This document shows positions 35,760 to 47,271 of a stretch of 64,000 nucleotides of DNA, piece after piece. The translations under genes and the position numbers were made by a program. Numbering within the stretch: position 1 is the first letter of the stretch; every line of letters starts with the position of its first letter. The DNA lies in IMG/VR virus record IMGVR_UViG_3300022200_000019, positions 62,001-126,000 of that record; one strand, given 5' to 3'. The notes below the pieces were generated by a model that had not been told where the DNA came from, searched no databases, and saw only the letters and a program-made list of their open reading frames with translations.

Positions 35760-36959
35760 ATGTCACAAACAAATACAGAAACAAGTATTAACGAATGTAG
35801 TTTTTGCGGTAAAGCAAAGGAAGAAGTAGTCAAACTTATCGTCGGCGATGGTGTTAGTATTTGTAATAACTGCGTAGAGTTTTGTGTTGAGTTATTAGAA
35901 GAAGAAAAACCTATTAATAAACAAAAACACGAAGCAAAAGATATTGATCCAGTGGAACTTAAAGAGTATTTAGATCAGTTTGTCATTGGGCAGGAGCAAG
36001 CCAAGATGGTGTTAAGTGTTGCTGTTGCTAATCATTATAAACGTATCAACAAAAAAGGTGATGTTAAAGTTGATAAAAGTAATGTATTATTACTTGGCCC
36101 CACCGGGTCAGGTAAAACGTTACTTGCTAAGTCAATTGCTGAATATTTAGACGTACCATTTGCTATTGCTGATGCTACATCATTAACAGAAGCAGGCTAC
36201 GTAGGGGACGATGTTGAAGTATTAATTAGCCGTTTACTACAAAATGCAAATGGCGATGTAGAACGTGCGCAACGTGGTATTGTGTTCGTTGATGAAATTG
36301 ATAAAATTTCACGCAAGTCCGAATCTGCTAGCGTAACACGAGATGTATCTGGTGAGGGCGTGCAACAAGCATTACTTAAAATGGTAGAAGGCACGGTTGT
36401 GCGTGTTCCTAATACCGGCAATAGAAAACACCCAGCCGGAGAAATGACCGAAGTTGATACCAAAAACATTTTGTTCATTGCTGCTGGTGCATTTGTTGGA
36501 TTAGATGAAATTCTTAAAAAGCGTGTACAGGGTGCTGGTATCGGATTTGGAGCAGATGTTAATCGTGTTGATACTACTAAAGTCGACCTATTGCCAGCAG
36601 ATTTAATCAAGTTTGGACTTATCCCAGAATTTGTAGGACGGTTTGCTAGTTTTGCTTTTGTACAAGAACTTTCTCGTGAAGACATGGTATATATTTTAAC
36701 TAGTGTTGAAAACAGTCTATTGCGTCAATTTGAATATTTGTTTAAGTGTAATGAAGTTGAATTAGAATTTGATCCAGAAGCATTGTTGTTAGTTGTAGAT
36801 AAAACAATTGAACAAAAAACTGGCGCACGTGGATTGCGAGCAGAATTAGAGAAGGTATTGTTGCCGCATATGTTTAATTTAGTGCGCTATCACAAAAATA
36901 ATATAAAAAATGTGGTTATTTCTAGGGATTTAATAAATACACCTATAGCATTATTATAA
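35760..36959 (+). CDS. clpX: ATP-dependent Clp protease ATPase subunit ClpX
   Basis: CSFCGK..CNNC zinc domain, [41 protein letters not shown] loop. Confidence 0.95.
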
Positions 36960-36962
36960 ATA
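36955..36962 (+). promoter_or_regulatory. T4-type late promoter (leaderless rpsU)
   Basis: TATAAATA 6 nt before the ATG. Confidence 0.7.
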
Positions 36963-36968
36963 CACTCG

Positions 36969-37202
36969 ATGATCAAACCAAAAGGCACAAAAGTATACGT
37001 AAAAGACGGCAATGTTGAAAAAGCATTGCGTAAACTAAAAAAGAAAGTACAGCGAGGCAACGTACTTCAAGAAGTTAAAGAACGTCAAAGTTACGTACAA
37101 CCATCACAAAAACGTAAAGCCGCTAAAGAAGCAGCAAAGCGACGTTGGGCAAAACACGTTCGTTCGCAAGAATTACCAGTAAAACCTCGCGGTAAGTGGT
37201 AG
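36969..37202 (+). CDS. rpsU: Ribosomal protein bS21
   Basis: VKDGNVEKALRKLKKK...EVKERQSYVQPSQKRK..K.AA.RR. Confidence 0.88.
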   Translation: MIKPKGTKVYVKDGNVEKALRKLKKKVQRGNVLQEVKERQSYVQPSQKRKAAKEAAKRRWAKHVRSQELPVKPRGKW

Positions 37203-37203
37203 A

Positions 37204-37815
37204 TTGGATCCAAACGTTTATTACTTTACCGGGTATAACGAAAAAACCGGAAATTGTAAATTTTTCTATGTGCCGATTCCTAAAAATGGAAGCACGTCAA
37301 TTCCATATATACTTCCAGAATCAACTTTAATTATTAGCAATGAAGATGAAATTTTATTAGATGCTACAGCACTAATTATTCTTCGGGATCCAATTGAACG
37401 TTGGTTTTCTGGGATTGCTCAATTTTATCATGCTGAAAGATTTAATAACAAATTTTTAAAAGATGATTTATTAGATTCAATATATAATCGTGCAATTAAT
37501 GACATTGCGTTAGACCCCCATACATATATACAAACAAGTTTTTTTAAAGATATACAATGTCAAGGACATATATTTTTTTATATGCTTGATAAATTTAAAA
37601 CCAACTCAAAGAAATGGCGAGCGAAAAATAACATTCACTTTCATTTTGACAAATGGGAGAATTTAAATAATTCAAAAAGTTCAATAACAAAAATTAAAAT
37701 GATTAACTATCTAAAACAACGAGTTACAGCTCAGGATTTAAAAAAAATACGTGATTATTACGCCGACGATTATTTGATTATTAATCTTGTAAAAGAATTG
37801 ACAAAATATTCTTAG
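37204..37815 (+). CDS. Sulfotransferase family 2-like protein
   Basis: IPKNGSTS (5'-PSB), LRDPIERWFS (3'-PB), YYADDY. Confidence 0.65.
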   Translation: MDPNVYYFTGYNEKTGNCKFFYVPIPKNGSTSIPYILPESTLIISNEDEILLDATALIILRDPIERWFSGIAQFYHAERFNNKFLKDDLLDSIYNRAINDIALDPHTYIQTSFFKDIQCQGHIFFYMLDKFKTNSKKWRAKNNIHFHFDKWENLNNSKSSITKIKMINYLKQRVTAQDLKKIRDYYADDYLIINLVKELTKYS

Positions 37816-37826
37816 TTTGTTATAAT
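37798..37826 (+). promoter_or_regulatory. Sigma70-type promoter of hsp20 (late ATAAATA also at 37833-37839)
   Basis: TTGACA-17-TATAAT. Confidence 0.8.
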
Positions 37827-37843
37827 ACAAGGATAAATAATAT

Positions 37844-37907
37844 TGTAGACGCCAGGGTTGGGTCTACATACAAAAATAGACTTGCTTAATTTAAGGAGAC
37901 TAACATG
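37844..37907 (+). promoter_or_regulatory. ROSE-like RNA thermometer
   Basis: 5' hairpin tgtagac/gtctaca, then CTTGCTTA-att-TAAGGAG pairing the SD with a bulged G. Confidence 0.65.
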
Positions 37908-38336
37908 ACAAATCTATCTACATTCGACTTCTCACCTCTTAACCGTAGCGCCATTGGCATTGACCGCCTAATGAGTCATATGGTTCGTAACTTTGAATCT
38001 ACACAGCAGGACAACTATCCTCCATACAATATTGTTGAAGATAGTGAAAATGAGTTCACACTCGAAATTGCTGTTGCTGGTTTTAAGAAAGGTGATATCT
38101 CAATTACTTCACAAGACGGACAGCTAACTGTTTCTGGTGAAAAACAAGCGGAAGATACTCGCAAGTACACCTGGAACAAAATTGCTACACGCAAGTTCAG
38201 CCGTTCGTTCACATTAGGTGAATACGTTGAAGTAACCGGTGCTTCTCAAGAAGATGGCATTCTTTCTATTAAGTTAGAACGCATTGTTCCAGAAGCAATG
38301 AAGCCAAAAACTATTGCTATTGACTACAAAGGGTAA
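37905..38336 (+). CDS. Small heat shock protein Hsp20 (IbpA-like)
   Basis: NYPPYNI, LEIAVAGF, LTVSG, FSRSFTL, DGILSI, PEAMKPKTIAI. Confidence 0.93.
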   Translation: MTNLSTFDFSPLNRSAIGIDRLMSHMVRNFESTQQDNYPPYNIVEDSENEFTLEIAVAGFKKGDISITSQDGQLTVSGEKQAEDTRKYTWNKIATRKFSRSFTLGEYVEVTGASQEDGILSIKLERIVPEAMKPKTIAIDYKG

Positions 38337-38353
38337 TATAATGCAGTAACAGG

Positions 38354-38379
38354 ATAGGGAGGGTAATCCTCCCTATTTT
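38354..38379 (+). terminator. Rho-independent terminator
   Basis: atagggagg-gtaat-cctccctat-ttt. Confidence 0.7.
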
Positions 38380-38403
38380 GTTAAATATTAGTATAACAGG
38401 AGA

Positions 38404-38718
38404 ATGGATTTGTCTACTCAAGTTGAAACCAGAACAAGAATCAAGCCAAACATTGCACTGCAAGAACCGCCTATGTTTAAGGTAATCTACCTAAATGATG
38501 AACAAACCAGTATGCAGTTTGTTATTGATAGCCTTGTAGACTTTTTTGATTATGCACCTATTAGTGCTGAAAAGATCACAGAAGATATTCATGTACAAGG
38601 CTCAGCAGTTGTAGCAGTGTTGCCATACGAAATGGCAGAACAAAAAGGCATTGAAGTAACCGTAAGTGCTCGCAGCAACGGTTATCCACTACAAGTCAAG
38701 CTAGAACCCGAAGAATAA
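38404..38718 (+). CDS. clpS: ClpAP adaptor ClpS
   Basis: PPMFKVIYLNDEQTSMQFV..IHVQG.AVVAV..YEMAEQK..YPL. Confidence 0.9.
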   Translation: MDLSTQVETRTRIKPNIALQEPPMFKVIYLNDEQTSMQFVIDSLVDFFDYAPISAEKITEDIHVQGSAVVAVLPYEMAEQKGIEVTVSARSNGYPLQVKLEPEE

Positions 38719-38721
38719 CAC

Positions 38722-39087
38722 ATGTATATTATCGTTGGCGAAGATGCTGCCTCACAGGTAGATACCAAATATCTGGTTTTTGAATTAGATACCATTCTTT
38801 ATAATAAAAATGAAGCCCCACTTAAAAGTTATTGTGTTGTTGACAATGAACATGTTCCCTTAATTGAGGTTAATCGAATCGGTGAACTACAAGAACTACA
38901 TCAAAATTTAATTAAAAATTATCATAAACGTAACTGGAATTTTTGCTTACAAGCAATTGAACATCTGAAAGGAAAATTTCGTGGCGAATTAGATACATTT
39001 TATGATGATTTGGAAAAACGCTGCTCGGTATTTCAACAATTCGAACCGCCCGCAAACTGGACTGGTGTTTACGATAAGACCAAGTAA
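38722..39087 (+). CDS. Stand-alone homolog of the C-terminal region of the CHASE2 adenylate cyclase
   Basis: ELHQNL..YHKRNW..LKGKFRGELDTFY..RC..NWTG aligns with cyclase ELHNNM..YKERDF..LKGEFDGQMDKYY..RC..SWNG. Confidence 0.65.
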   Translation: MYIIVGEDAASQVDTKYLVFELDTILYNKNEAPLKSYCVVDNEHVPLIEVNRIGELQELHQNLIKNYHKRNWNFCLQAIEHLKGKFRGELDTFYDDLEKRCSVFQQFEPPANWTGVYDKTK

Positions 39088-39117: not shown

Positions 39118-39125
39118 TATAAATA
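39118..39125 (+). promoter_or_regulatory. T4-type late promoter of the curli module
   Basis: TATAAATA upstream of csgF. Confidence 0.7.
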
Positions 39126-39152: not shown

Positions 39153-39644
39153 TTGAAAAGCAACGACGATGGCCTTGCGGCTATTGTAGCAATTATTCTA
39201 ACAGTAATCTTTGTACTGTTTACATTTAAAGCAGAGGCAGGTGAGTTAACTCACCAGTTTCATAGTCCTGCGTTCAGCGGCAATGGGTATAGTACCCACG
39301 TCCTAACTATAGATCAGTTAGAACAACAACGTAAGCAGAAAATAAAAGACGACGAACAAGCCGCTATTGATAAAGCAGAACGAGACGCTAAATCAACTAA
39401 TATCTACAAGTTTAAGAACAACTTAGAAAGTCGTGTTTACGCACAACTATCTAAGCAAATTGCAGACGCTCTTTTTGGCGAAAGCAGTAATTTAGCAGAC
39501 ACAAGTTGGTCGGAAGTAGAAACCCCATTCGGTGATACCATTAAATGGAAACGTGAGAACGATATTGTATATGTTGAAATATACGATAGCAATGGCGATT
39601 TAGCCTCTGAGTTCCAGACACCGGTTGGGGATTTCGCATTTTGA
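39153..39644 (+). CDS. csgF: Curli assembly protein CsgF-like
   Basis: Signal/TM segment ending AEA, then GELTHQFHSPAFSG (cf. CsgF GTMTFQFRNPNFGG); adjacent to csgG. Confidence 0.75.
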   Translation: MKSNDDGLAAIVAIILTVIFVLFTFKAEAGELTHQFHSPAFSGNGYSTHVLTIDQLEQQRKQKIKDDEQAAIDKAERDAKSTNIYKFKNNLESRVYAQLSKQIADALFGESSNLADTSWSEVETPFGDTIKWKRENDIVYVEIYDSNGDLASEFQTPVGDFAF

Positions 39645-40483
39645 CACGCTTAATTCTACTACTACTCGCTGCTGGTATACTTGGAGGGTGCGTAGCAAAC
39701 CCGCCTAAACAGTACGAACCCCCATCTCGAATTGTAACTCACGTTGAAGGATTTATGGATATCCCGCCTCCTAGTGGCGGTAAACTTGTTGCGGCTGTAT
39801 ATGGTTTTCAAGATAAAACTGGACAGCGTAAACCCTCTGACAAACTTGCGAATATTAGTTACGCAGTAACGCAAGGTGCTGAAGTATGGGTTATTAAAGC
39901 CCTCAAGGAAGTGGGCGGAGGAGAATGGTTTAGAGTTGTAGAGCGTGTTGGATTAGACAATTTAACAAAAGAGCGTCAAATTATCCGACAAGCACGTCAG
40001 CAAGTTAATGACGAAACACCTCTTAAACCAATGCTGTTTGCTGGTGTGTTAGTTGAAGGAGCCATCACTGGTTACGACTCTAACACGTTAACCGGCGGAG
40101 CAGGAGCCAGATACTTAGGTATTGGTCCAAGCACAGAATACCGCCAGGATGTGGTAACTGTGAGTATGCGGTTAATAAGCGTTCAAAGTGGAGAAGTCTT
40201 ACTTAATACAAGTGTTACTAAAACTATTGTTAGTTTTGGCGATCACGTAAGTTTGTTCCGGTTTATTGATATGGGAACAAAGGCACTTGAGCTAGAATCA
40301 GGAACCACTGAAAACGAGCCGGTGAACTATGCTGTTCGTGTAGCAATCGAACAATGTGTAGTTGAACTGGTTAAAGATGGCGAACGCATAGGTATTTGGT
40401 CATATAAGACTCACGAAGAAGGAGCCAATGATACTAAAGAAGAAGTAAAGACGGATGAAAACTCCGTGCGTGGAGAAAAATAA
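39641..40483 (+). CDS. csgG: Curli secretion channel lipoprotein CsgG
   Basis: Lipobox LGGC; VYGFQDKTGQRKP, AVTQGA, WFRVVER.GLDNLTKERQIIR, GGAGARYLGIG, YRQDVVTV. Confidence 0.93.
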   Translation: MTRLILLLLAAGILGGCVANPPKQYEPPSRIVTHVEGFMDIPPPSGGKLVAAVYGFQDKTGQRKPSDKLANISYAVTQGAEVWVIKALKEVGGGEWFRVVERVGLDNLTKERQIIRQARQQVNDETPLKPMLFAGVLVEGAITGYDSNTLTGGAGARYLGIGPSTEYRQDVVTVSMRLISVQSGEVLLNTSVTKTIVSFGDHVSLFRFIDMGTKALELESGTTENEPVNYAVRVAIEQCVVELVKDGERIGIWSYKTHEEGANDTKEEVKTDENSVRGEK

Positions 40484-41172
40484 TGCGCAAAATATTATAT
40501 GTCCTATTAGGACTTTGGAGTTCAACAGTATTTGCCAGTGACGTGTATATTGATCAAGCAGGTTCAAGTACAACTATTGATATTACACAAACTGGTTCAA
40601 GCAACGAAGTTAGCGGCGACGCTGGCACTACAACTGCGGCAAGTGTAGATGGTACAGGTATTGACTTGGACATTACACAAATTGGTTCAAGCAACATAGC
40701 AGAAATTAACTTAGATACTGCTACAAGTGCTGACGTAGAATATACTGCTACAGGTAGTGATAACTTGTTTGACATTTATGTTAATGGTGGTTCCTCAAAT
40801 ACTGCTACAGTAAACGTTACTGGTGACAGCAACGAAGTAACAATTTGTGGAACCAATGGAGCAGCAAACTCAGCAGCAGGCTTTGCTACTATTACAAGTT
40901 CGGGCATAACTACTGCTGGAACAACTTGCTCAACAGGCATTGCGAGTAATGGTAACACTAATACTGTTACTGCGTATGGCGACTATAACTTAGTTAACAT
41001 TGAGCAAGGAGCAGGTGTTGGTGGATCAACTAACACAGTTACCATTGGCACAGCACTAGCAGGCGGCGATAACAACGTTGTAAACATTGTACAGGATAAC
41101 TTGGAAGCAAATACCGTAACATTAACAGTTGACGGTAGCAGCAACCGTGTCAATATTTTACAAGATAACTAA
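40483..41172 (+). CDS. Curlin-repeat protein (CsgA/CsgB-like)
   Basis: Signal peptide, then repeats of the IxQxGxxN type (YIDQAGSS, ITQTGSSN, ITQIGSSN, IVQDN). Confidence 0.75.
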   Translation: MRKILYVLLGLWSSTVFASDVYIDQAGSSTTIDITQTGSSNEVSGDAGTTTAASVDGTGIDLDITQIGSSNIAEINLDTATSADVEYTATGSDNLFDIYVNGGSSNTATVNVTGDSNEVTICGTNGAANSAAGFATITSSGITTAGTTCSTGIASNGNTNTVTAYGDYNLVNIEQGAGVGGSTNTVTIGTALAGGDNNVVNIVQDNLEANTVTLTVDGSSNRVNILQDN

Positions 41173-42262
41173 TTTCCTACTGATAGGGTTGTTCTCAGTA
41201 TCAGCCCTGGCAGCAATAGGAACTATCACAGAGCAACAGGGTCCTGATGCTCAACTTAAACGCGACAGTGAAACTATAGTTGCTCGCAAAGGCACTGGTC
41301 TTGAAATGGATGACGAAGTAAGAACGGCAGCAACTAAACTTAATTTAACATTTGAAGATGATACAAAGGTAGCAATGACTGAACAAAGTGTATTGCTTAT
41401 TGATGACTTTGTTTACGATCCCAATGCTAAAACTGGCAAACTAGCGATGCAAGTAGCAATGGGCACAGTTCGTTATGCGTCAGGCGGCATTGCTAAGAAC
41501 AACAGAGAAAACGTTCGTATGCGCACACCAACAGCAACCATATCAGTACGCGGTACTGACTTTGCTATGGTTGTAGACGAAGTTGGCCGTAGTCTAGTAA
41601 CATTACTCCCCAGTTGTCCAGACTTTGGTTTAGTAGAAAACAAAGATGATGAAGAAAAATGTCCAGTTGGTGAGATTATGGTAAGCACAGATGCTGGGTA
41701 TGTATTAATGAATCAAGCATACCAAACTACAATTGTAGCAAGTGCGTTACAAGAGCCAACGAAACCCAAAATTTTAGACGATAAGCCAACATTAAACAAC
41801 TTGCTTATTATTTCGCCACCGCCTCAATTCCCACGTGGGTTTGACTCAGCAGAAGAAGAAGCACAACAAGTTACATTCTTAGATGCTGACTTGTTAGAGT
41901 TTGATGACTTAGCACAGGATTTATTAGCAGACGATAGTTTAGAGCAAAATGACTTGGATCAAGATAAACTAGAAGGCGAGTTTTTAGATGACATGTTAAT
42001 GATGTTATTAGATCCGGGATTGGATGACGCACTCAAAGAACGTGATGGTGTATTGCCGACCTTAGCAGATTATCCTTGGGTAAAAGGTTATTACAACGAA
42101 CAAGAAATTACAGTTTATTCTGAACGCCCACCACACATTGCGGAAATTAAAACAACTCGCGATACAGACGCAGATGTAGTTATTACGCAGGACGGTGTAA
42201 AAGCAACTATTATTGAGAACGGAGGCGGCAATGTTATTATCAACATTACGCAAACTCAGTAG
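41129..42262 (+). CDS. Exported FecR-domain protein with acidic linker and curlin-like C-terminal strand
   Basis: Signal peptide; DEVRT..FEDDT..GTVRYASG..RTPTATISVRGTDF; ends GGGNVIINITQTQ. Confidence 0.75.
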   Translation: MTVAATVSIFYKITNFLLIGLFSVSALAAIGTITEQQGPDAQLKRDSETIVARKGTGLEMDDEVRTAATKLNLTFEDDTKVAMTEQSVLLIDDFVYDPNAKTGKLAMQVAMGTVRYASGGIAKNNRENVRMRTPTATISVRGTDFAMVVDEVGRSLVTLLPSCPDFGLVENKDDEEKCPVGEIMVSTDAGYVLMNQAYQTTIVASALQEPTKPKILDDKPTLNNLLIISPPPQFPRGFDSAEEEAQQVTFLDADLLEFDDLAQDLLADDSLEQNDLDQDKLEGEFLDDMLMMLLDPGLDDALKERDGVLPTLADYPWVKGYYNEQEITVYSERPPHIAEIKTTRDTDADVVITQDGVKATIIENGGGNVIINITQTQ

Positions 42263-43571
42263 TCTATTATTCTTATTTGCTACAACTGTGTGGGCAGATA
42301 GTGTTCTCATCATTCACCAAAACTACTCCAGTGTTCATTCCAATGTCGGCGGACGTCTAACTAACGAAGGGCATACGGTAACTTACTCTACATCAGAAGT
42401 AAATGCTAGTACTATTGCCAACTACAATCAAGTTTGGGACGTAAGGTATAGTTCGCTGTCAAGCACACAGGCATCAGTGTATGACACGTTTGTTCAGAAT
42501 GGAGGATTCTTATACTTAGTAACAGAGAATCCAAGTTGTTGCGGTACACGAAATAGTGCTGTTGCTTCAATGATATCTAATATGGGCGGCGGCAGTGGAT
42601 TAACGATTGGTGGAAGTGCTGGTTCAACTTCAAACAATATCACACAGGTTAATACAACTTATATGACTGCTTTGTCATCAGGAACTTATATTACATTTGC
42701 CGCAGGTAGTAACATCACAAACTATGGCAACGGACAATGGTTGTTCAAAGATAGCATTGGTAGAGTTGGCGGCGTTATGTGGGTAGGCAATGCTGGAAAC
42801 TTGTCACAAGGGTACTCGGGCACGGTAGTCACGGTTGCTGACATCAACTGGTTAGATGCTACTCGTTTTACAGGAACAAACATCACAGCCTTAGACGATA
42901 TTATCGCAGGTATTGTTGCTGGTACCGTATCAGGTACTATCAGTGGAAGTGGAAACACTGGCGGCGGAGCAGCCGCAACACCTGTGTACAGTTCAGGCAT
43001 AACAGCCGCACAAACCCTAAGAAGAAATGCATTCACAGGAACAGGTGCGGAGATAAATGCTGATATCAACGGTAGTAACAATGATGTTTATATACATCAA
43101 GCAGGAACGCATTATATAGAACTTGGGATAGTAGGAAGTTCAAATACAGTTAACTTAGAGCAAGCATCAACTCAAGTAGGAATCATACATTACGCAGAGA
43201 CAGATATCATCGGCGATAGCAATACATTAGATTTGATACAATCCGGTGATGGCAATAAAACAGCATTTATTACAGTAACAGGTGATAACAATATAGCAGA
43301 TATCGCACAGCGCGATAGCGGACAGCATTATCTACAACTTGATTTAATAGGTGGTGGTCATGATGCCACTGTAGTACAAGAAGGTACAGGCAATCACGCA
43401 GCCACAGTAGAGTTAACAAACTCGGGTGGAGCCTGGACATTTGGGTTGACACAATCAGGCAGTACGGATAAAGAATATAGTTTACCGCACTCAATGAGTG
43501 ACGGTAGCACAACAAGCGGAACGTGTTATGTAGCAGCAGGATGCTCGTTAACAGTCATACAAAGTGATTAA
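42231..43571 (+). CDS. Curlin-repeat protein with N-terminal globular passenger domain
   Basis: GGAGG RBS, signal peptide, about 200-aa alpha/beta domain, Gly linker, C-terminal GxxN.V.I.Q repeats. Confidence 0.7.
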   Translation: MLLSTLRKLSSLLFLFATTVWADSVLIIHQNYSSVHSNVGGRLTNEGHTVTYSTSEVNASTIANYNQVWDVRYSSLSSTQASVYDTFVQNGGFLYLVTENPSCCGTRNSAVASMISNMGGGSGLTIGGSAGSTSNNITQVNTTYMTALSSGTYITFAAGSNITNYGNGQWLFKDSIGRVGGVMWVGNAGNLSQGYSGTVVTVADINWLDATRFTGTNITALDDIIAGIVAGTVSGTISGSGNTGGGAAATPVYSSGITAAQTLRRNAFTGTGAEINADINGSNNDVYIHQAGTHYIELGIVGSSNTVNLEQASTQVGIIHYAETDIIGDSNTLDLIQSGDGNKTAFITVTGDNNIADIAQRDSGQHYLQLDLIGGGHDATVVQEGTGNHAATVELTNSGGAWTFGLTQSGSTDKEYSLPHSMSDGSTTSGTCYVAAGCSLTVIQSD

Positions 43572-43614: not shown

Positions 43615-44025
43615 ATGAAAAAATTGGTGTGTGCGGCACTTGCTGTATACTGCTTAAATGTTACAGCACACAGTCGCGATGATTATGAATACATAAACTG
43701 GAATTCATTTCGTGTTTATGAAGAAATAGAAAAACGCCCAAAACTTGATGTTTTTGCTGGGCATAGTGTTGGTTTTGGTTACACACAAAAGTATAATCAA
43801 ATTGATACACTTGTTGTAGGCGAAGTAGGTGGCGCTCATAGCCGCTGGCTAGGCCCTAGAACTCAATTATACACAGAAGCAAATGTAGCAACAGACTTGT
43901 TTACAGAAGCAAAAGTAAACATCAATCATTTTAACAACAAATATTCAGTTACAAGATTTGTTCTACGCAAAGACAACACTGACCAAGGTGGCTTTGTTGG
44001 ATTTGGTTATATGCGTCGTTTTTGA
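43615..44025 (+). CDS. Small exported protein, possible outer-membrane beta-barrel
   Basis: Signal peptide, alternating beta pattern, C-terminal GFVGFGYMRRF. Confidence 0.45.
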   Translation: MKKLVCAALAVYCLNVTAHSRDDYEYINWNSFRVYEEIEKRPKLDVFAGHSVGFGYTQKYNQIDTLVVGEVGGAHSRWLGPRTQLYTEANVATDLFTEAKVNINHFNNKYSVTRFVLRKDNTDQGGFVGFGYMRRF

Positions 44026-44039
44026 CACTAAATATCCGT

Positions 44040-46082
44040 ATGAAGAAACTACTGAGTCCATGGTGGGCATTGATTACCTTATTTGTTCTCACGGCTGTAT
44101 TTTTACAACGTCCTAACTTTACTGAAAGTATCAAATTAAATTACTTTGACACACTTATTACTAGTAGAGAAGCAGTAGACAATAACATTTATATTGTTAA
44201 TATTGACGAAGCCGCACTAGAGAAATATGGTCAGTATCCTTTTCCACGTAACATTTACGGCGACATTATCAAAGACATTTACAATCGTGGCGCTGGATTA
44301 GTTATTTGGAATATTATGATGCCGGAAGCAGATCGCTTTGGCGGAGATGAACAGTTAGCAGGAGTTATGACTGAATTTCCTGTTATATTAGCAAGCCGCC
44401 CCTCTGTCAAAAATAAAAATGTTCCAATGCAACCGGCATCAAATACAATCAATGCACAGTATGTGGATCAGTTATTTCCTTATCCAGGTATTATTTCAAA
44501 TATTCCAGAACTTGAACAAGTAGCAGTAGGCTCTGGTATTGTTTCAACTGAACCTGAAATCGATGGCGTTAACAGAAGATTACCAGCACTTGCTGTGGTT
44601 GGTGATTTGGTGTATCCAGGTATTGCTCTTGAAACACTTCGTGTTATTGCAGGACAACCTAGTTTTGATGTTAAACTAGCACCTAATGGTATTGATAAAT
44701 TTAGAATACGTGGTCACGGACCTATTGCTACAGATGAAATGGGACGTATTTGGATTGATTGGGCACAGCGTAGCAAACAGGTTAGCGTAATCAATATGCC
44801 TGCAGACTTTGGCGGCGCAGTAGTTATCGTAGATGTGACTGCGGCAGGCATTGCTAACCCTGTTCCTACAGCGTTAGGAGCAAAATTTCCCGGTGAAGTT
44901 CACTCAGCAATGCTAGGAACAATGTTTAATAAAACAAATATTCAACGTCCATACTGGGCAGATACATTTGAAATTCCTGCGGCATTTTTAGCAGGACTAT
45001 TATTAATTTTAGTATCACGTTGGACCTGGCTAGGACTAGGATTAACTGTTGTGCTTGGCGGTGCTGTTGTCCCTGCGTCAATGTATATGTTTGACACAGA
45101 ACTATTTTTGTTAGACGCAACAGGTCCTCTTGCAATTATTGTCCTTGTGGCATTACACACATACGGTATTAAATTTGTACGTGAGTTCTTAGAAAAGCAA
45201 GCAATCAAGAAACAGTTTGCCGGTTACTGCTCACCGGAAGTTGTTCGTTTATTACAAGAAAACCCGGATCTTATTAAGAAGGGTGTTAAGAAAGACGTAA
45301 GTGTTATGTTCTCAGATTTGCGCGGCTTTACTCCAATTGGCGAACACTTTGGCGCAGACGTTAAAGGTTTAGGAGATTATATGAATGGCTATATGGATGC
45401 TATTACGCAGCCTATCCTAAATCACAACGGTATGGTTATTAAGTATGTAGGTGACGCAAGCATGCACATACAAGGTGCGCCTATTGAAGATGACAGACAC
45501 GCATACAACATTGTCGAAACAGGCTTACAAATGTTAGACGCTGTTGACGCTTATACACGAGAAGCAGAAGCACGTGGTTTGCCACCAGCAGCAATGGGTT
45601 TCGGCATTAACTCAGGCGAAGGCTTTATTGGTGAAATGGGCAGCACAGCAAGACACAGTTATGACATCTTAGGCGATATGGTTTCAACAGCGGCTCGATT
45701 AGAAGCACGTTGTAAAGCATATGGTGTGCTATGTATCATTGGCGCAGAAACATACAACAGAACAGCGGATGACTTCTTCTACTTATATCTGGACAATTTA
45801 CAACCAAAAGGCAAAACAGTAGCAGATTTCATTTATACAGCGTTACGCATCAAAGGAAATATCACGGACTATGGCACTGCACGTGAGTTACATAATAATA
45901 TGCATCAAGCATATAAAGAAAGAGATTTTGATAAAGCAATTGGTATGTGCATGGGCCTGAAAGGTGAATTTGACGGGCAAATGGACAAATATTATAAAAT
46001 GTGGATTGAACGTTGCGAATTAATGAAGACCATGAAATTAGATAAGAGCTGGAATGGCGAGTGGATTGCTAACGAAAAATAA
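44040..46082 (+). CDS. CHASE2-domain class III adenylate cyclase
   Basis: IVNIDEAALEKYGQYPFPR (CHASE2), three TMs, FSDLRGFT, KYVGDA, GINSG, YDILGDMVSTAARLE; ATG 44040 follows CTAAATA. Confidence 0.92.
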   Translation: MKKLLSPWWALITLFVLTAVFLQRPNFTESIKLNYFDTLITSREAVDNNIYIVNIDEAALEKYGQYPFPRNIYGDIIKDIYNRGAGLVIWNIMMPEADRFGGDEQLAGVMTEFPVILASRPSVKNKNVPMQPASNTINAQYVDQLFPYPGIISNIPELEQVAVGSGIVSTEPEIDGVNRRLPALAVVGDLVYPGIALETLRVIAGQPSFDVKLAPNGIDKFRIRGHGPIATDEMGRIWIDWAQRSKQVSVINMPADFGGAVVIVDVTAAGIANPVPTALGAKFPGEVHSAMLGTMFNKTNIQRPYWADTFEIPAAFLAGLLLILVSRWTWLGLGLTVVLGGAVVPASMYMFDTELFLLDATGPLAIIVLVALHTYGIKFVREFLEKQAIKKQFAGYCSPEVVRLLQENPDLIKKGVKKDVSVMFSDLRGFTPIGEHFGADVKGLGDYMNGYMDAITQPILNHNGMVIKYVGDASMHIQGAPIEDDRHAYNIVETGLQMLDAVDAYTREAEARGLPPAAMGFGINSGEGFIGEMGSTARHSYDILGDMVSTAARLEARCKAYGVLCIIGAETYNRTADDFFYLYLDNLQPKGKTVADFIYTALRIKGNITDYGTARELHNNMHQAYKERDFDKAIGMCMGLKGEFDGQMDKYYKMWIERCELMKTMKLDKSWNGEWIANEK

Positions 46083-46391: not shown

Positions 46392-46775
46392 TTATTTCTT
46401 AGATGGAGGATTATTAACTGCTGCTTTTTCTGCTTGTCTGTGTAAGTTCTTTTCTTGTACTTTAGTTTGGTCGAACTGCTTACTAATTGAAGCATACTGA
46501 TCAACGATTGCTTGAGCATCTTCTTCTTTGATTTGGCCGTGTTTACCGTAGTATTCTAATACTATGCTTAACTTGGTGTTTAAGCGAATCATGTCATTAT
46601 CTAACATGCGGATACGGTCTACTAGAGCAATAAGTGTTTTCTTTGTATCGCCGATAACCGGATCAATTTCGTCGGTTACCCAACGCCATATAAAATACAC
46701 AAAATATCCAAGACCCATTGCGGCAATAACTGGAAAGCCGTATTCATTGATCGCTTGTACAATATCGTTAGGCAT
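46392..46775 (-). CDS. Single-TM coiled-coil membrane protein (YvrJ/BhlA-like GFP motif)
   Basis: YGFPVIAAMGLGYFVYF, then RIRMLDNDMIRL; paralog of 46993. Confidence 0.6.
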   Translation of the reverse strand: MPNDIVQAINEYGFPVIAAMGLGYFVYFIWRWVTDEIDPVIGDTKKTLIALVDRIRMLDNDMIRLNTKLSIVLEYYGKHGQIKEEDAQAIVDQYASISKQFDQTKVQEKNLHRQAEKAAVNNPPSKK

Positions 46776-46863: not shown

Positions 46864-47000
46864 CTTCCTAGCATAGTCCCAATAAAAATACCAAGCATAA
46901 TACCTAGTGTAAACCCAATACCGCCGTATAACCTACGCATCGGTGCTTCTAGTTTATTTTGTGCTTCTAGATAAGCAAGTGTTGCTTGATGTTTAATCAC
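46860..47000 (-). CDS. 46-aa glycine-zipper membrane peptide (not in ORF track)
   Basis: GTG start; ...RRLYGGIGFTLGIMLGIFIGTMLGR; fills the gap exactly with overlapping start and stop. Confidence 0.55.
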   Translation of the reverse strand: MIKHQATLAYLEAQNKLEAPMRRLYGGIGFTLGIMLGIFIGTMLGR

Positions 47001-47271
47001 GCCGTGCGTCTTCCTTGCCTTCGTTAGCAGCGAGTCTATCTACATTTGGTCGTACACCAATTACATGACTCATAAGTGCGTCAATTTTAACTAAATCATT
47101 GTTCATTGTTTGAACACGGTTGTCCAATGCGTGAATAATGCCTTTAACACCGTTTACGTCACCGGTTACACCGGCTAAGATAAACTTAACTGTTAATAAT
47201 ACAAAATATCCTGCCGCCAATGCGCCGGCAATTGGAAAACCAACTTCACCAACTATTGCTAAAAAATCCAT
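46993..47271 (-). CDS. Single-TM coiled-coil membrane protein (YvrJ/BhlA-like GFP motif)
   Basis: VGFPIAGALAAGYFVLL, then RVQTMNNDLVKI; GGAG RBS; TATAAATA on the minus strand at 47302-47309. Confidence 0.65.
   Translation of the reverse strand: MDFLAIVGEVGFPIAGALAAGYFVLLTVKFILAGVTGDVNGVKGIIHALDNRVQTMNNDLVKIDALMSHVIGVRPNVDRLAANEGKEDARRD

What the first reader, a model, noticed from the sequence alone, without database searches (positions are those of the whole stretch)
38722..39087. Stand-alone, non-catalytic paralog of the cyclase C-terminus upstream of the curli module
Seen: this 121-aa ORF aligns end to end with the last ~115 aa of the 44040 cyclase (IIVGE/IIGAE, ELDTI/YLDNL, ELHQN/ELHNN, LKGKFRGELDTFY/LKGEFDGQMDKYY, RC, NWTG/SWNG). 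It lacks the metal-binding Asp motifs. It sits behind clpS, in a different transcription unit. Known: class III cyclases work as dimers. Inference: it may be a dominant-negative inhibitor, adaptor or decoy for the phage cyclase or for host CHASE2 cyclases.
Basis: partly seen in the sequence, partly recalled or inferred. Interest (0 to 1): 0.65.

Follow-up and report, generated by a model that had tools for sequence, protein, structure and literature searches.

The report
Stand-alone copy of cyclase tail
A small, well-conserved gene of a freshwater giant phage is a free-standing, non-enzymatic copy of the tail end of a signalling enzyme (a class III nucleotide cyclase); it defines a large unnamed phage protein family, and most phages that carry it have no cyclase of their own, so it is unlikely to serve mainly as a brake on the phage's own cyclase.

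Summary
The 121-aa ORF at 38722-39087 (called X121 here) is homologous end to end to residues 570-684 of the CHASE2 cyclase at 44022-46082. BLASTP gives E 3e-10 over 62 aa. Profile-profile comparison gives 99% probability, E 3.8e-18, over 115 columns.

X121 corresponds to the last three strands of the cyclase catalytic domain plus a TPR-like helical cap. It starts after every catalytic element and has lost the KGK loop. AlphaFold gives a compact fold (pLDDT 92) that matches the tail of full-length viral cyclases (TM 0.78-0.81).

It is a real gene: dN/dS is 0.06-0.11, there are 794 clusters (50% identity) at E<=1e-3, and the best 150 are all stand-alone. It has no Pfam or PHROG family.

Eight of nine near-complete (>=91%) ~320-350 kb phage genomes with X121 have no cyclase domain, and the five checked for CsgG have none. 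Melnitz has the cyclase but no X121. The gene usually lies near hsp20-clpS, yet complete relatives carry clpS without it.

The same module ends cyclases in 106 of 301 sampled genomes of one bacterial class. My best guess (about 0.3) is a trans-acting mimic of this cyclase module that acts on host cyclases or their partners. Function is untested.

The parts
38722..39087 (+). X121: 121-aa stand-alone protein, homologous to the C-terminal module of class III cyclases
   Evidence: ORF; 25 word-search relatives; 207 viral loci; 794 clusters at 50% identity; dN/dS 0.06-0.11; AF2 pLDDT 92.3, pTM 0.84
38722..38841 (+). Residues 1-40: strand-helix-strand-strand, equivalent to the last strands (beta6-alpha5-beta7-beta8) of the cyclase catalytic domain; the KGK loop is lost
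   Evidence: hhalign; model E2-5, H7-11, E18-26, E34-40 against cyclase model E172-175, H176-182, E187-194, E203-209; local Foldseek matches to solved cyclases 3r5g, 5o5l, 5oyh over 38-41 aa at rmsd 2.3-2.6 A, not significant on their own; solved catalytic domains end at about cyclase residue 598-607
38860..39039 (+). Residues 47-106: three-helix TPR-like cap carrying H60, Y67, D91, Y94 and R100
   Evidence: Model H47-68, H72-82, H91-106; VIA-align Z 5-6 to TPR proteins, generic level; sub-threshold TPR_2 at the same place in cellular homologues; residues shared across X121 and cyclases
45729..46073 (+). Cyclase residues 570-684: the region X121 is homologous to
44022..46082 (+). CHASE2 + class III cyclase (686 aa, TTG start)
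   Evidence: Pfam CHASE2 3.8e-30 and Guanylate_cyc 1.7e-15; phrog_35576 4.9e-164
38404..38718 (+). clpS, ending 3 nt before X121
   Evidence: Pfam ClpS 1e-21; within 10 kb in 77 of 80 related loci
37905..38336 (+). hsp20
   Evidence: Pfam HSP20 1.3e-18; in 76 of 80 related loci
37798..37826 (+). Sigma-70-type promoter-like site, 12 of 12 consensus with extended TG, upstream of hsp20-clpS-X121
   Evidence: a consensus match only
39118..39125 (+). TATAAATA (T4-late-promoter-like) in the 65-nt gap between X121 and csgF
   Evidence: window-wide count is not above chance
39153..43571 (+). Curli-type module downstream: csgF, csgG, curlin-repeat protein, FecR-domain protein, second curlin-repeat protein
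   Evidence: Pfam; same order as in phage Melnitz

Best explanation
Shown: X121 is an autonomously folding, non-catalytic protein. It descends once from the 3' end of a class III cyclase gene, probably a phage-type CHASE2 cyclase. It keeps the last three strands of the catalytic domain and the TPR-like helical cap that follows them, and nothing else. It has been kept under strong purifying selection as an accessory gene in a clade of roughly 320-350 kb freshwater/estuarine phages. It usually sits just downstream of hsp20-clpS and, where a curli-cyclase module exists, usually just upstream of it. Inferred: it works as a soluble, trans-acting mimic of this cyclase C-terminal module. It would bind what the module binds, either a cyclase itself or the module's partner, and so alter cyclic-nucleotide signalling in the infected cell. 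Because most phages that carry it have no cyclase, the usual target would be host cyclases, which commonly end in the same module. Its position behind a sigma-70-type promoter suggests early expression. Confidence is about 0.95 for the identity and origin and about 0.3 for the mechanism.
For: Homology and fold. Single origin: one X121 clade with 100/100 support on a long stem, grouping weakly (76/84) with phage-type cyclase tails. Selection and family size. The residues invariant in X121 (D23, Y67, R100, W113, G115, plus H60 and Y94) are the same ones conserved in phage and cellular cyclase tails. So the module's own architecture, and perhaps its binding function, is retained. The module is common in cellular cyclases: 106 of 301 sampled genomes of one class, always at the end of long ORFs, and behind both CHASE2 and GAF-GAF-PAS sensors. 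Precedent: in the CHASE2 cyclase Cya2, the native 118-aa C-terminal extension strongly raises activity and affects the linker/transducer region (PMC5995499). X121 occurs in cyclase-free phages, which points away from the phage cyclase.
Against: There is no direct evidence of binding to any cyclase. The complex prediction gave no verdict. The host is unknown, so I cannot say it has such a cyclase. I did not test whether the Cya2 extension is homologous to this module. In a cyclase the three strands are an integral, covalently attached part of the catalytic domain, so simple competition for their place is unlikely. Near-constant linkage with hsp20-clpS could point to a different role. The long stem branch fits a change of function after the split.
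Confidence: 0.3

Rival explanations
1. A protein-binding module reused for a target unrelated to cyclases. After the fragment became independent, its surface changed, and it now binds some other host or phage protein through the TPR-like cap or the newly exposed sheet.
For: Long stem branch at the base of the X121 clade (1.19 changes per column). Positions invariant only in X121: I3, Y17, E21, T24, C75, A78. Presence in phages with neither cyclase nor curli genes. TPR-like folds are general protein-binding units.
Against: The residues that define the module in cyclases are still invariant, but they may simply be structural. No candidate partner emerges from gene context.
Confidence: 0.27
2. 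An accessory of the phage proteostasis genes: an adaptor, anti-adaptor or substrate-delivery factor working with ClpS, ClpX or Hsp20. It might even deliver host cyclases for degradation.
For: clpS lies within 10 kb in 77 of 80 loci, hsp20 in 76 and clpX in 62. The stop of clpS and the start of X121 nearly abut in 11 loci, including the window. The same neighbourhood holds for a distant subfamily member.
Against: All these loci belong to one phage clade with conserved gene order, so linkage is not independent evidence. In 66 loci a reverse-strand metallophosphoesterase gene separates clpS from X121. Only 38 of 72 close clpS loci have X121. Two 100%-complete genomes have clpS but no X121. Locus L082 has X121 near the cyclase with no clpS nearby.
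Confidence: 0.13
3. One reading: a dominant-negative subunit or regulator of the phage's own CHASE2 cyclase in the curli module.
For: It is a paralogue of that cyclase's tail and lies 65 nt upstream of the curli-cyclase module in the window. Where a curli module is present it usually starts right after X121, though in L082 the module and cyclase lie upstream of X121. Class III cyclases act as dimers (established knowledge).
Against: Eight of nine near-complete X121-bearing genomes lack any cyclase domain. Melnitz has the module without X121, and X121 found no match in HTVC008M. X121 lacks the parts of the catalytic domain that I recall forming the dimer interface (from memory, not tested).
Confidence: 0.1
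4. A decaying remnant of a deleted cyclase gene with no function.
For: Such 3' relics do occur: one bacterial genome has a 116-codon open frame matching only the cyclase tail.
Against: dN/dS is 0.06-0.11 with saturated synonymous sites. Length and start are conserved in 64 distinct sequences. There are 308 clusters at E<=1e-10. The fold is confident and compact.
Confidence: 0.02

Closest known systems
C-terminal module of CHASE2-type (and GAF-GAF-PAS-type) class III nucleotide cyclases, phage and alphaproteobacterial
   Same: Homologous over the whole length. Same order of secondary-structure elements and same predicted fold. Same invariant D, Y, R, W and G positions.
   Different: X121 is not fused to a catalytic domain. 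It lacks all catalytic residues and the KGK loop, and it has its own set of invariant positions (I3, Y17, E21, T24, C75).
C-terminal extension of Synechocystis Cya2, a CHASE2 guanylate cyclase (PMC5995499)
   Same: It is a segment that follows the catalytic core of a CHASE2 cyclase. It was shown to stimulate activity, and the paper calls it structurally uncharacterised.
   Different: Homology to the module studied here was not tested. The Cya2 extension is 118 aa beyond the core, whereas here about 79 aa lie beyond the core and X121 also includes the last about 36 aa of the core.
Curli (T8SS) modules with FecR and adenylate cyclase in pelagiphages, HTVC008M and Melnitz (PMC9599517, PMC9004378)
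   Same: Same gene set and order downstream of X121: csgF, csgG, curlin repeat, FecR, curlin repeat, cyclase.
   Different: Those papers do not describe a cyclase-tail paralogue. The Melnitz ORF upstream of csgF is unrelated to X121. The short 'histidine kinase' said to precede csgF in podoviral pelagiphages could not be compared.
TPR repeat proteins
   Same: The helices at 47-106 resemble one TPR unit plus a capping helix. Cellular homologues get sub-threshold TPR_2 hits at the same place.
   Different: X121 has no Pfam TPR hit. Z scores of 5-6 are at the generic level for helical hairpins.

Membership tests
Class III nucleotide cyclase catalytic domain (PF00211) | Pfam match above the gathering score | tested here: not met
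   No Pfam family at E<=1 for X121; the cyclase itself scores 57.5 bits
Class III nucleotide cyclase catalytic domain (PF00211) | Two metal-binding Asp (strand 1 and the beta2-beta3 turn) | tested here: not met
   X121 aligns only from cyclase residue 570 on. The FSD and GDA motifs lie at about 432 and 478.
Class III nucleotide cyclase catalytic domain (PF00211) | Transition-state Asn/Arg helix (alpha4) and phosphate-contacting Lys of the KGK loop | tested here: not met
   Helix alpha4 precedes the aligned region. KGK is invariant in the cyclases but is a variable loop in X121. The role of the Lys is from memory of mammalian cyclase structures.
Cyclase C-terminal module (last three strands plus helical cap) | Profile-profile homology over the full module | tested here: met
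   99.0% probability, E 3.8e-18, 115 columns; the X121 profile hits cellular cyclase tails at E down to 1e-21
Cyclase C-terminal module (last three strands plus helical cap) | Same three-dimensional arrangement | tested here: met
   TM 0.78 (117 aa, rmsd 2.7 A) to a 686-aa viral CHASE2 cyclase model and 0.81 to a 182-aa cyclase-domain cluster. These are predicted models on both sides.
Cyclase C-terminal module (last three strands plus helical cap) | Shared invariant residues | tested here: met
   D23, Y67, R100, W113 and G115 are conserved in X121, phage cyclases and cellular cyclases
TPR repeat (PF07719 and relatives) | Pfam match or a clear structural match | tested here: inconclusive
   No Pfam hit; VIA-align Z 5-6; homologous cellular cyclases score 22.5-25.4 bits against a cut-off of 27
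Histidine kinase / HPt (the 'HK' reported upstream of phage csgF) | Sequence or fold match to HisKA, HATPase or HPt | tested here: not met
   No Pfam hit; the only HPt row is 1sr2 at Z 4.7, within the generic range.
Dominant-negative or decoy subunit of a cyclase dimer | Physical binding to a cyclase and an effect on its activity | not testable with these tools
   The complex prediction gave no verdict; this needs a bench assay

The most novel reading that the evidence does not exclude
X121 is the founding member of a phage-specific class of 'enzyme-tail mimics'. It would be a soluble copy of the regulatory C-terminal module of host class III cyclases that docks on those cyclases early in infection. 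There it would either switch cyclic-nucleotide signalling or hand the cyclases to the neighbouring phage ClpS/ClpX machinery for degradation.
Probability: 0.1. Interest if true: 0.8.

Novelty: new variant of a known kind. Interest (0 to 1): 0.5.

Why it matters
Phage-encoded curli and cyclase modules are abundant in the oceans and their role is unsettled (PMC9599517, PMC9004378). X121 shows that a piece of that cyclase has been turned into an independent, strongly conserved gene that outlives the cyclase itself in most related genomes. That gives a defined, small, well-folding protein with which to ask two questions: what does the C-terminal module of CHASE2 cyclases bind, and do giant phages interfere with host cyclic-nucleotide signalling? 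The module is reported to stimulate activity in Cya2 but is structurally uncharacterised. X121 also provides a clean example of a new gene arising from a sub-domain fragment, and a large unnamed family (308 clusters at E<=1e-10) that could be given a family model.

Tried and rejected
- **Family scans:** Pfam and PHROGs scans of X121 found no family.
- **Solved structures:** The sequence search found only chance-level rows. The Foldseek PDB search gave no match at E<=0.001. VIA-align gave only generic helical matches at Z<=6.
- **Complex prediction:** X121 with cyclase 400-686 scored 0.00, no verdict. This is not evidence either way.
- **Expression:** 23 of the 24 listed sequencing runs hold part of the stretch, but none is RNA.
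- **Phage DNA search:** The megablast search of the region against the phage collection found no match.
- **Melnitz ORF upstream of csgF:** I tested it as a possible counterpart and it is unrelated. It has no Pfam family.
- **The published 'HK' upstream of phage csgF:** No sequences or annotations could be retrieved from the paper's held supplements, and no podoviral curli phage is in the phage collection.
- **Soluble truncated cyclase next to CHASE2 cyclases:** I rejected this idea. Those neighbours are full-length GAF-GAF-PAS cyclases.
- **Apparent stand-alone copies in one bacterial genome:** One is a frameshifted cyclase and the other a tail relic.

Full report
**What is there**

The window is part of a 212,917-bp virus record with an estimated completeness of 61%. 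The ORF at 38722-39087 (+) encodes 121 aa, called X121 here. Its neighbours, in order on the + strand, are as follows (Pfam):
- clpX (35760-36959)
- ribosomal protein bS21 (36969-37202)
- an unassigned 203-aa ORF
- hsp20 (37905-38336)
- clpS (38404-38718)
- X121
- csgF (39153-39644)
- csgG (39641-40483)
- a curlin-repeat protein
- a FecR-domain protein
- a second curlin-repeat protein
- a 136-aa ORF
- a 686-aa CHASE2 + class III cyclase (44022-46082)

The curli-FecR-cyclase order is the one annotated in Methylophilales phage Melnitz. It is also the one described for pelagiphages (PMC9599517; PMC9004378).

**Checking the observation**

BLASTP of X121 against the cyclase is significant for X121 54-115 against cyclase 618-679 (29% identity, E 3e-10). 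The N-terminal third needs profiles. A 26-sequence family alignment against the cyclase gives 96.4% probability, E 1.1e-9, over X121 4-118 = cyclase 572-682. A 54-sequence X121 alignment against a 24-sequence alignment of cyclase residues 400-686 gives 99.0%, E 3.8e-18, 115 columns, X121 2-120 = cyclase 570-684. So the end-to-end claim is right.

Solved catalytic domains (Cya2 2w01, CyaB 3r5g and others) align with the phage cyclase up to about residue 598-607. It follows that:
- X121 residues 1 to about 36 correspond to the last strand-helix-strand-strand of the catalytic domain.
- The rest corresponds to a roughly 79-aa extension beyond it.
- X121 starts after helix alpha4, so both metal-binding Asp, the specificity positions and the Asn/Arg helix are absent.
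- The KGK loop, invariant in the cyclases, is a variable loop in X121.

**Fold**

With the 54-sequence alignment, AlphaFold2 gives a compact model (pLDDT 92.3, pTM 0.84). Its elements are strands 2-5, 18-26 and 34-40, helices 47-68, 72-82 and 91-106, and a short final strand 116-118. The model of cyclase 400-686 (pLDDT 88.3) has the same elements in the same order from residue 571 on.

Structure searches gave the following:
- Foldseek against the PDB found no whole-fold match. It found only local matches of 38-41 aa to solved cyclases at rmsd 2.3-2.6 A, none significant.
- VIA-align found TPR proteins at Z 5-6 for helices 50-110, which is the generic range.
- Against predicted structures, the model matches a 686-aa viral CHASE2 cyclase (TM 0.78, 117 aa, rmsd 2.7 A) and a 182-aa viral cyclase-domain cluster (TM 0.81).
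- In BFVD it matches a 671-aa phage COG4252 protein (E 2e-5).

Cellular GAF-GAF-PAS cyclases that share the module receive sub-threshold TPR_2 hits immediately after the catalytic domain. I therefore read the module as three terminal strands of the catalytic domain capped by one TPR-like unit and a further helix.

**A real gene and a large family**

- Against its two closest relatives, pN is 0.12-0.21 while synonymous sites are saturated, giving dN/dS 0.06-0.11.
- The word search found 25 relatives of 100-129 aa.
- The viral-contig scan found 207 loci, with 64 distinct sequences among the 80 kept.
- The exhaustive profile search found 794 clusters (50% identity) at E<=1e-3 and 308 at E<=1e-10. 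The best 150 are all 80-144 aa.
- ESM-Atlas clusters of the family are 88-98% viral.
- No Pfam or PHROG family covers it.

**Origin**

In a tree of the module, X121 forms one clade (100/100) on a long stem of 1.19 changes per column. The tree used 18 X121 sequences, 15 phage cyclase tails and 33 tails from genome contigs. The X121 clade groups weakly (76/84) with phage-type cyclase tails rather than with cellular ones. A catalytic domain cannot lack its last strands, so the fused state is ancestral and X121 is the derived fragment.

Positions conserved in X121, phage cyclases and cellular cyclases alike are D23, Y67, R100, W113 and G115, with H60 and Y94 nearly so. I3, Y17, E21, T24, C75 and A78 are invariant only in X121.

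**Distribution, which bears on function**

Counts among the 80 X121 loci:

| Neighbour within 10 kb | Loci |
|---|---|
| clpS | 77 |
| hsp20 | 76 |
| clpX | 62 |
| csgF / csgG | 15 / 14 |
| full cyclase | 12 |

- Of 48 loci with at least 8 kb downstream, 10 have csgG and 10 have a cyclase.
- X121 abuts clpS in 11 loci, as in the window. In 66 loci it is separated from clpS by about 0.8 kb, which holds a reverse-strand metallophosphoesterase gene in the two loci inspected.
- Among records at least 91% complete, X121 occurs without any PF00211 domain in eight (G001, G003-G006, G023-G025). It occurs with a cyclase in one (G007).
- Two 100%-complete relatives (G021, G022) have clpS but neither X121 nor a cyclase.
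- The five cyclase-free genomes that I checked for CsgG also lack it.
- Only 38 of 72 close clpS loci carry X121.
- In one deep-branching locus (L082), X121 lies 1.8 kb downstream of the cyclase, next to nucleotide-metabolism genes and with no clpS nearby.
- A tblastn search with X121 hit only the cyclase tail in Melnitz and found nothing in HTVC008M. The Melnitz ORF upstream of csgF is unrelated to X121.

So X121 is an accessory gene whose presence depends neither on a phage cyclase, nor on curli genes, nor strictly on clpS.

**The module in cells**

A scan of species-representative genomes with the cyclase tail found full-length CHASE2 cyclases (26-30% identical over residues 1-686). They occur in marine Alphaproteobacteria, SAR86, Micavibrio and others, some on megabase contigs. 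The X121 profile hits the end of long ORFs (mostly 730-870 aa) in 106 of 301 sampled genomes of the class of one such genome, at E down to 1e-21. No genuine stand-alone copy was found in those genomes. The two candidates are a frameshifted cyclase and a tail relic.

For the CHASE2 cyclase Cya2, a native 118-aa C-terminal extension greatly raises activity and influences the linker region (PMC5995499). Whether that extension is homologous to this module I could not test.

**Expression signals**

A perfect sigma-70-type consensus lies upstream of hsp20 (37798-37826). A 10/12 match lies upstream of clpS. No terminator-like site follows X121. TATAAATA sits in the 65-nt gap before csgF, but the motif is not enriched in the window (8 found, 7.2 expected). 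Sequencing runs holding the stretch are freshwater, estuary and marine DNA metagenomes, and none is RNA. Early co-transcription with hsp20-clpS and separate, possibly late, expression of the curli genes is therefore an inference only.

**Interpretation**

The identity and origin of X121 are well supported. Its function is not shown. The retained module-defining residues, the frequency of the module in bacterial cyclases, the Cya2 precedent and the absence of a phage cyclase in most carriers make a trans-acting mimic aimed at host cyclases, or at the module's partner, my preferred reading (about 0.3).

The rivals are:
- a reused binding module with an unrelated target (0.27);
- a Clp/Hsp20 accessory (0.13);
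- a regulator of the phage's own cyclase (0.1);
- a dead remnant (0.02).

The complex prediction of X121 with the cyclase's cytoplasmic part gave no verdict and is not used as evidence.

**Novelty and score**

I found no description of a cyclase-tail paralogue in the two phage curli papers or in the other literature searches. It is a new variant of a known kind: a stand-alone, non-catalytic derivative of a known enzyme's sub-domain, forming a large unnamed phage family. Interest is 0.5. The evolutionary case is clear and experimentally tractable, but there is no functional evidence yet.

Noticed in passing
window 44022-46082 (cyclase residues about 552-562): In the window's cyclase and its closest relatives, the helix that normally carries the transition-state Asn reads GDMVSTAARLE (Ser in place of Asn). 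A more distant phage subgroup keeps GDGVNLASRLE. This may mean altered or reduced catalysis in the first group.
   Followed up: no
window 37798-37826: A 12-of-12 sigma-70 consensus (TTGACA, 17 nt, TATAAT with an extended TG) sits upstream of hsp20, which is unusual in a phage region otherwise poor in strong matches.
   Followed up: partly
L007, L009, L013, L017 and most related loci, the 26 nt before the X121 start: A strongly conserved short intergenic motif (CATGATACATATTTAAAAGGA) lies between the divergent metallophosphoesterase gene and X121. It holds the start of the reverse gene and the ribosome-binding site of X121, and on the other strand a TAAATA-like element.
   Followed up: no
L088-L093 (genome contigs): Contigs binned into MAGs labelled Chitinophagaceae, Bifidobacterium, Pirellulales, Rhodobacteraceae and Luteolibacter carry phage-type cyclases. 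L090-L093 also carry FecR, and L091 and L093 carry csgF/csgG (L093 also hsp20). Their cyclase tails fall with the phage-type cyclase tails in the tree (L093 only weakly). These are probably phage contigs placed in the wrong bins.
   Followed up: partly
L111, L115, L118, L119, L121, L123, L125: In several marine Rhodospirillales-type genomes a CHASE2 cyclase and a second cyclase lie next to each other on opposite strands, and both end in the same C-terminal module. The two second cyclases scanned (L111, L123) are GAF-GAF-PAS cyclases.
   Followed up: partly
L207 (G330:C4:2324517-2324777): A bacterial chromosome holds a 116-codon open frame that matches only the cyclase tail, with no catalytic domain upstream. 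This is a sporadic 3' relic of the kind from which X121 could have arisen.
   Followed up: partly
window 43615-44025: A 136-aa ORF with a signal-peptide-like N-terminus lies between the second curlin-repeat gene and the cyclase, and its stop overlaps the cyclase's TTG start. It had no tblastn match in the 80 related loci.
   Followed up: no
window 46392-46775 and 46993-47271 (minus strand): Two small ORFs (127 and 92 aa) share a similar N-terminal hydrophobic segment followed by a similar helical stretch. They may be paralogous membrane proteins just downstream of the cyclase.
   Followed up: no
ESM Atlas and BFVD matches: Viral clusters of 182-aa and 287-aa proteins carry a cyclase domain without CHASE2. 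Phages may therefore hold a series of truncated cyclase forms between the full enzyme and X121.
   Followed up: no
window 35760-38718: The phage carries clpX, ribosomal protein bS21, hsp20 and clpS in one block. The block is conserved across the related ~320-350 kb phage records.
   Followed up: partly
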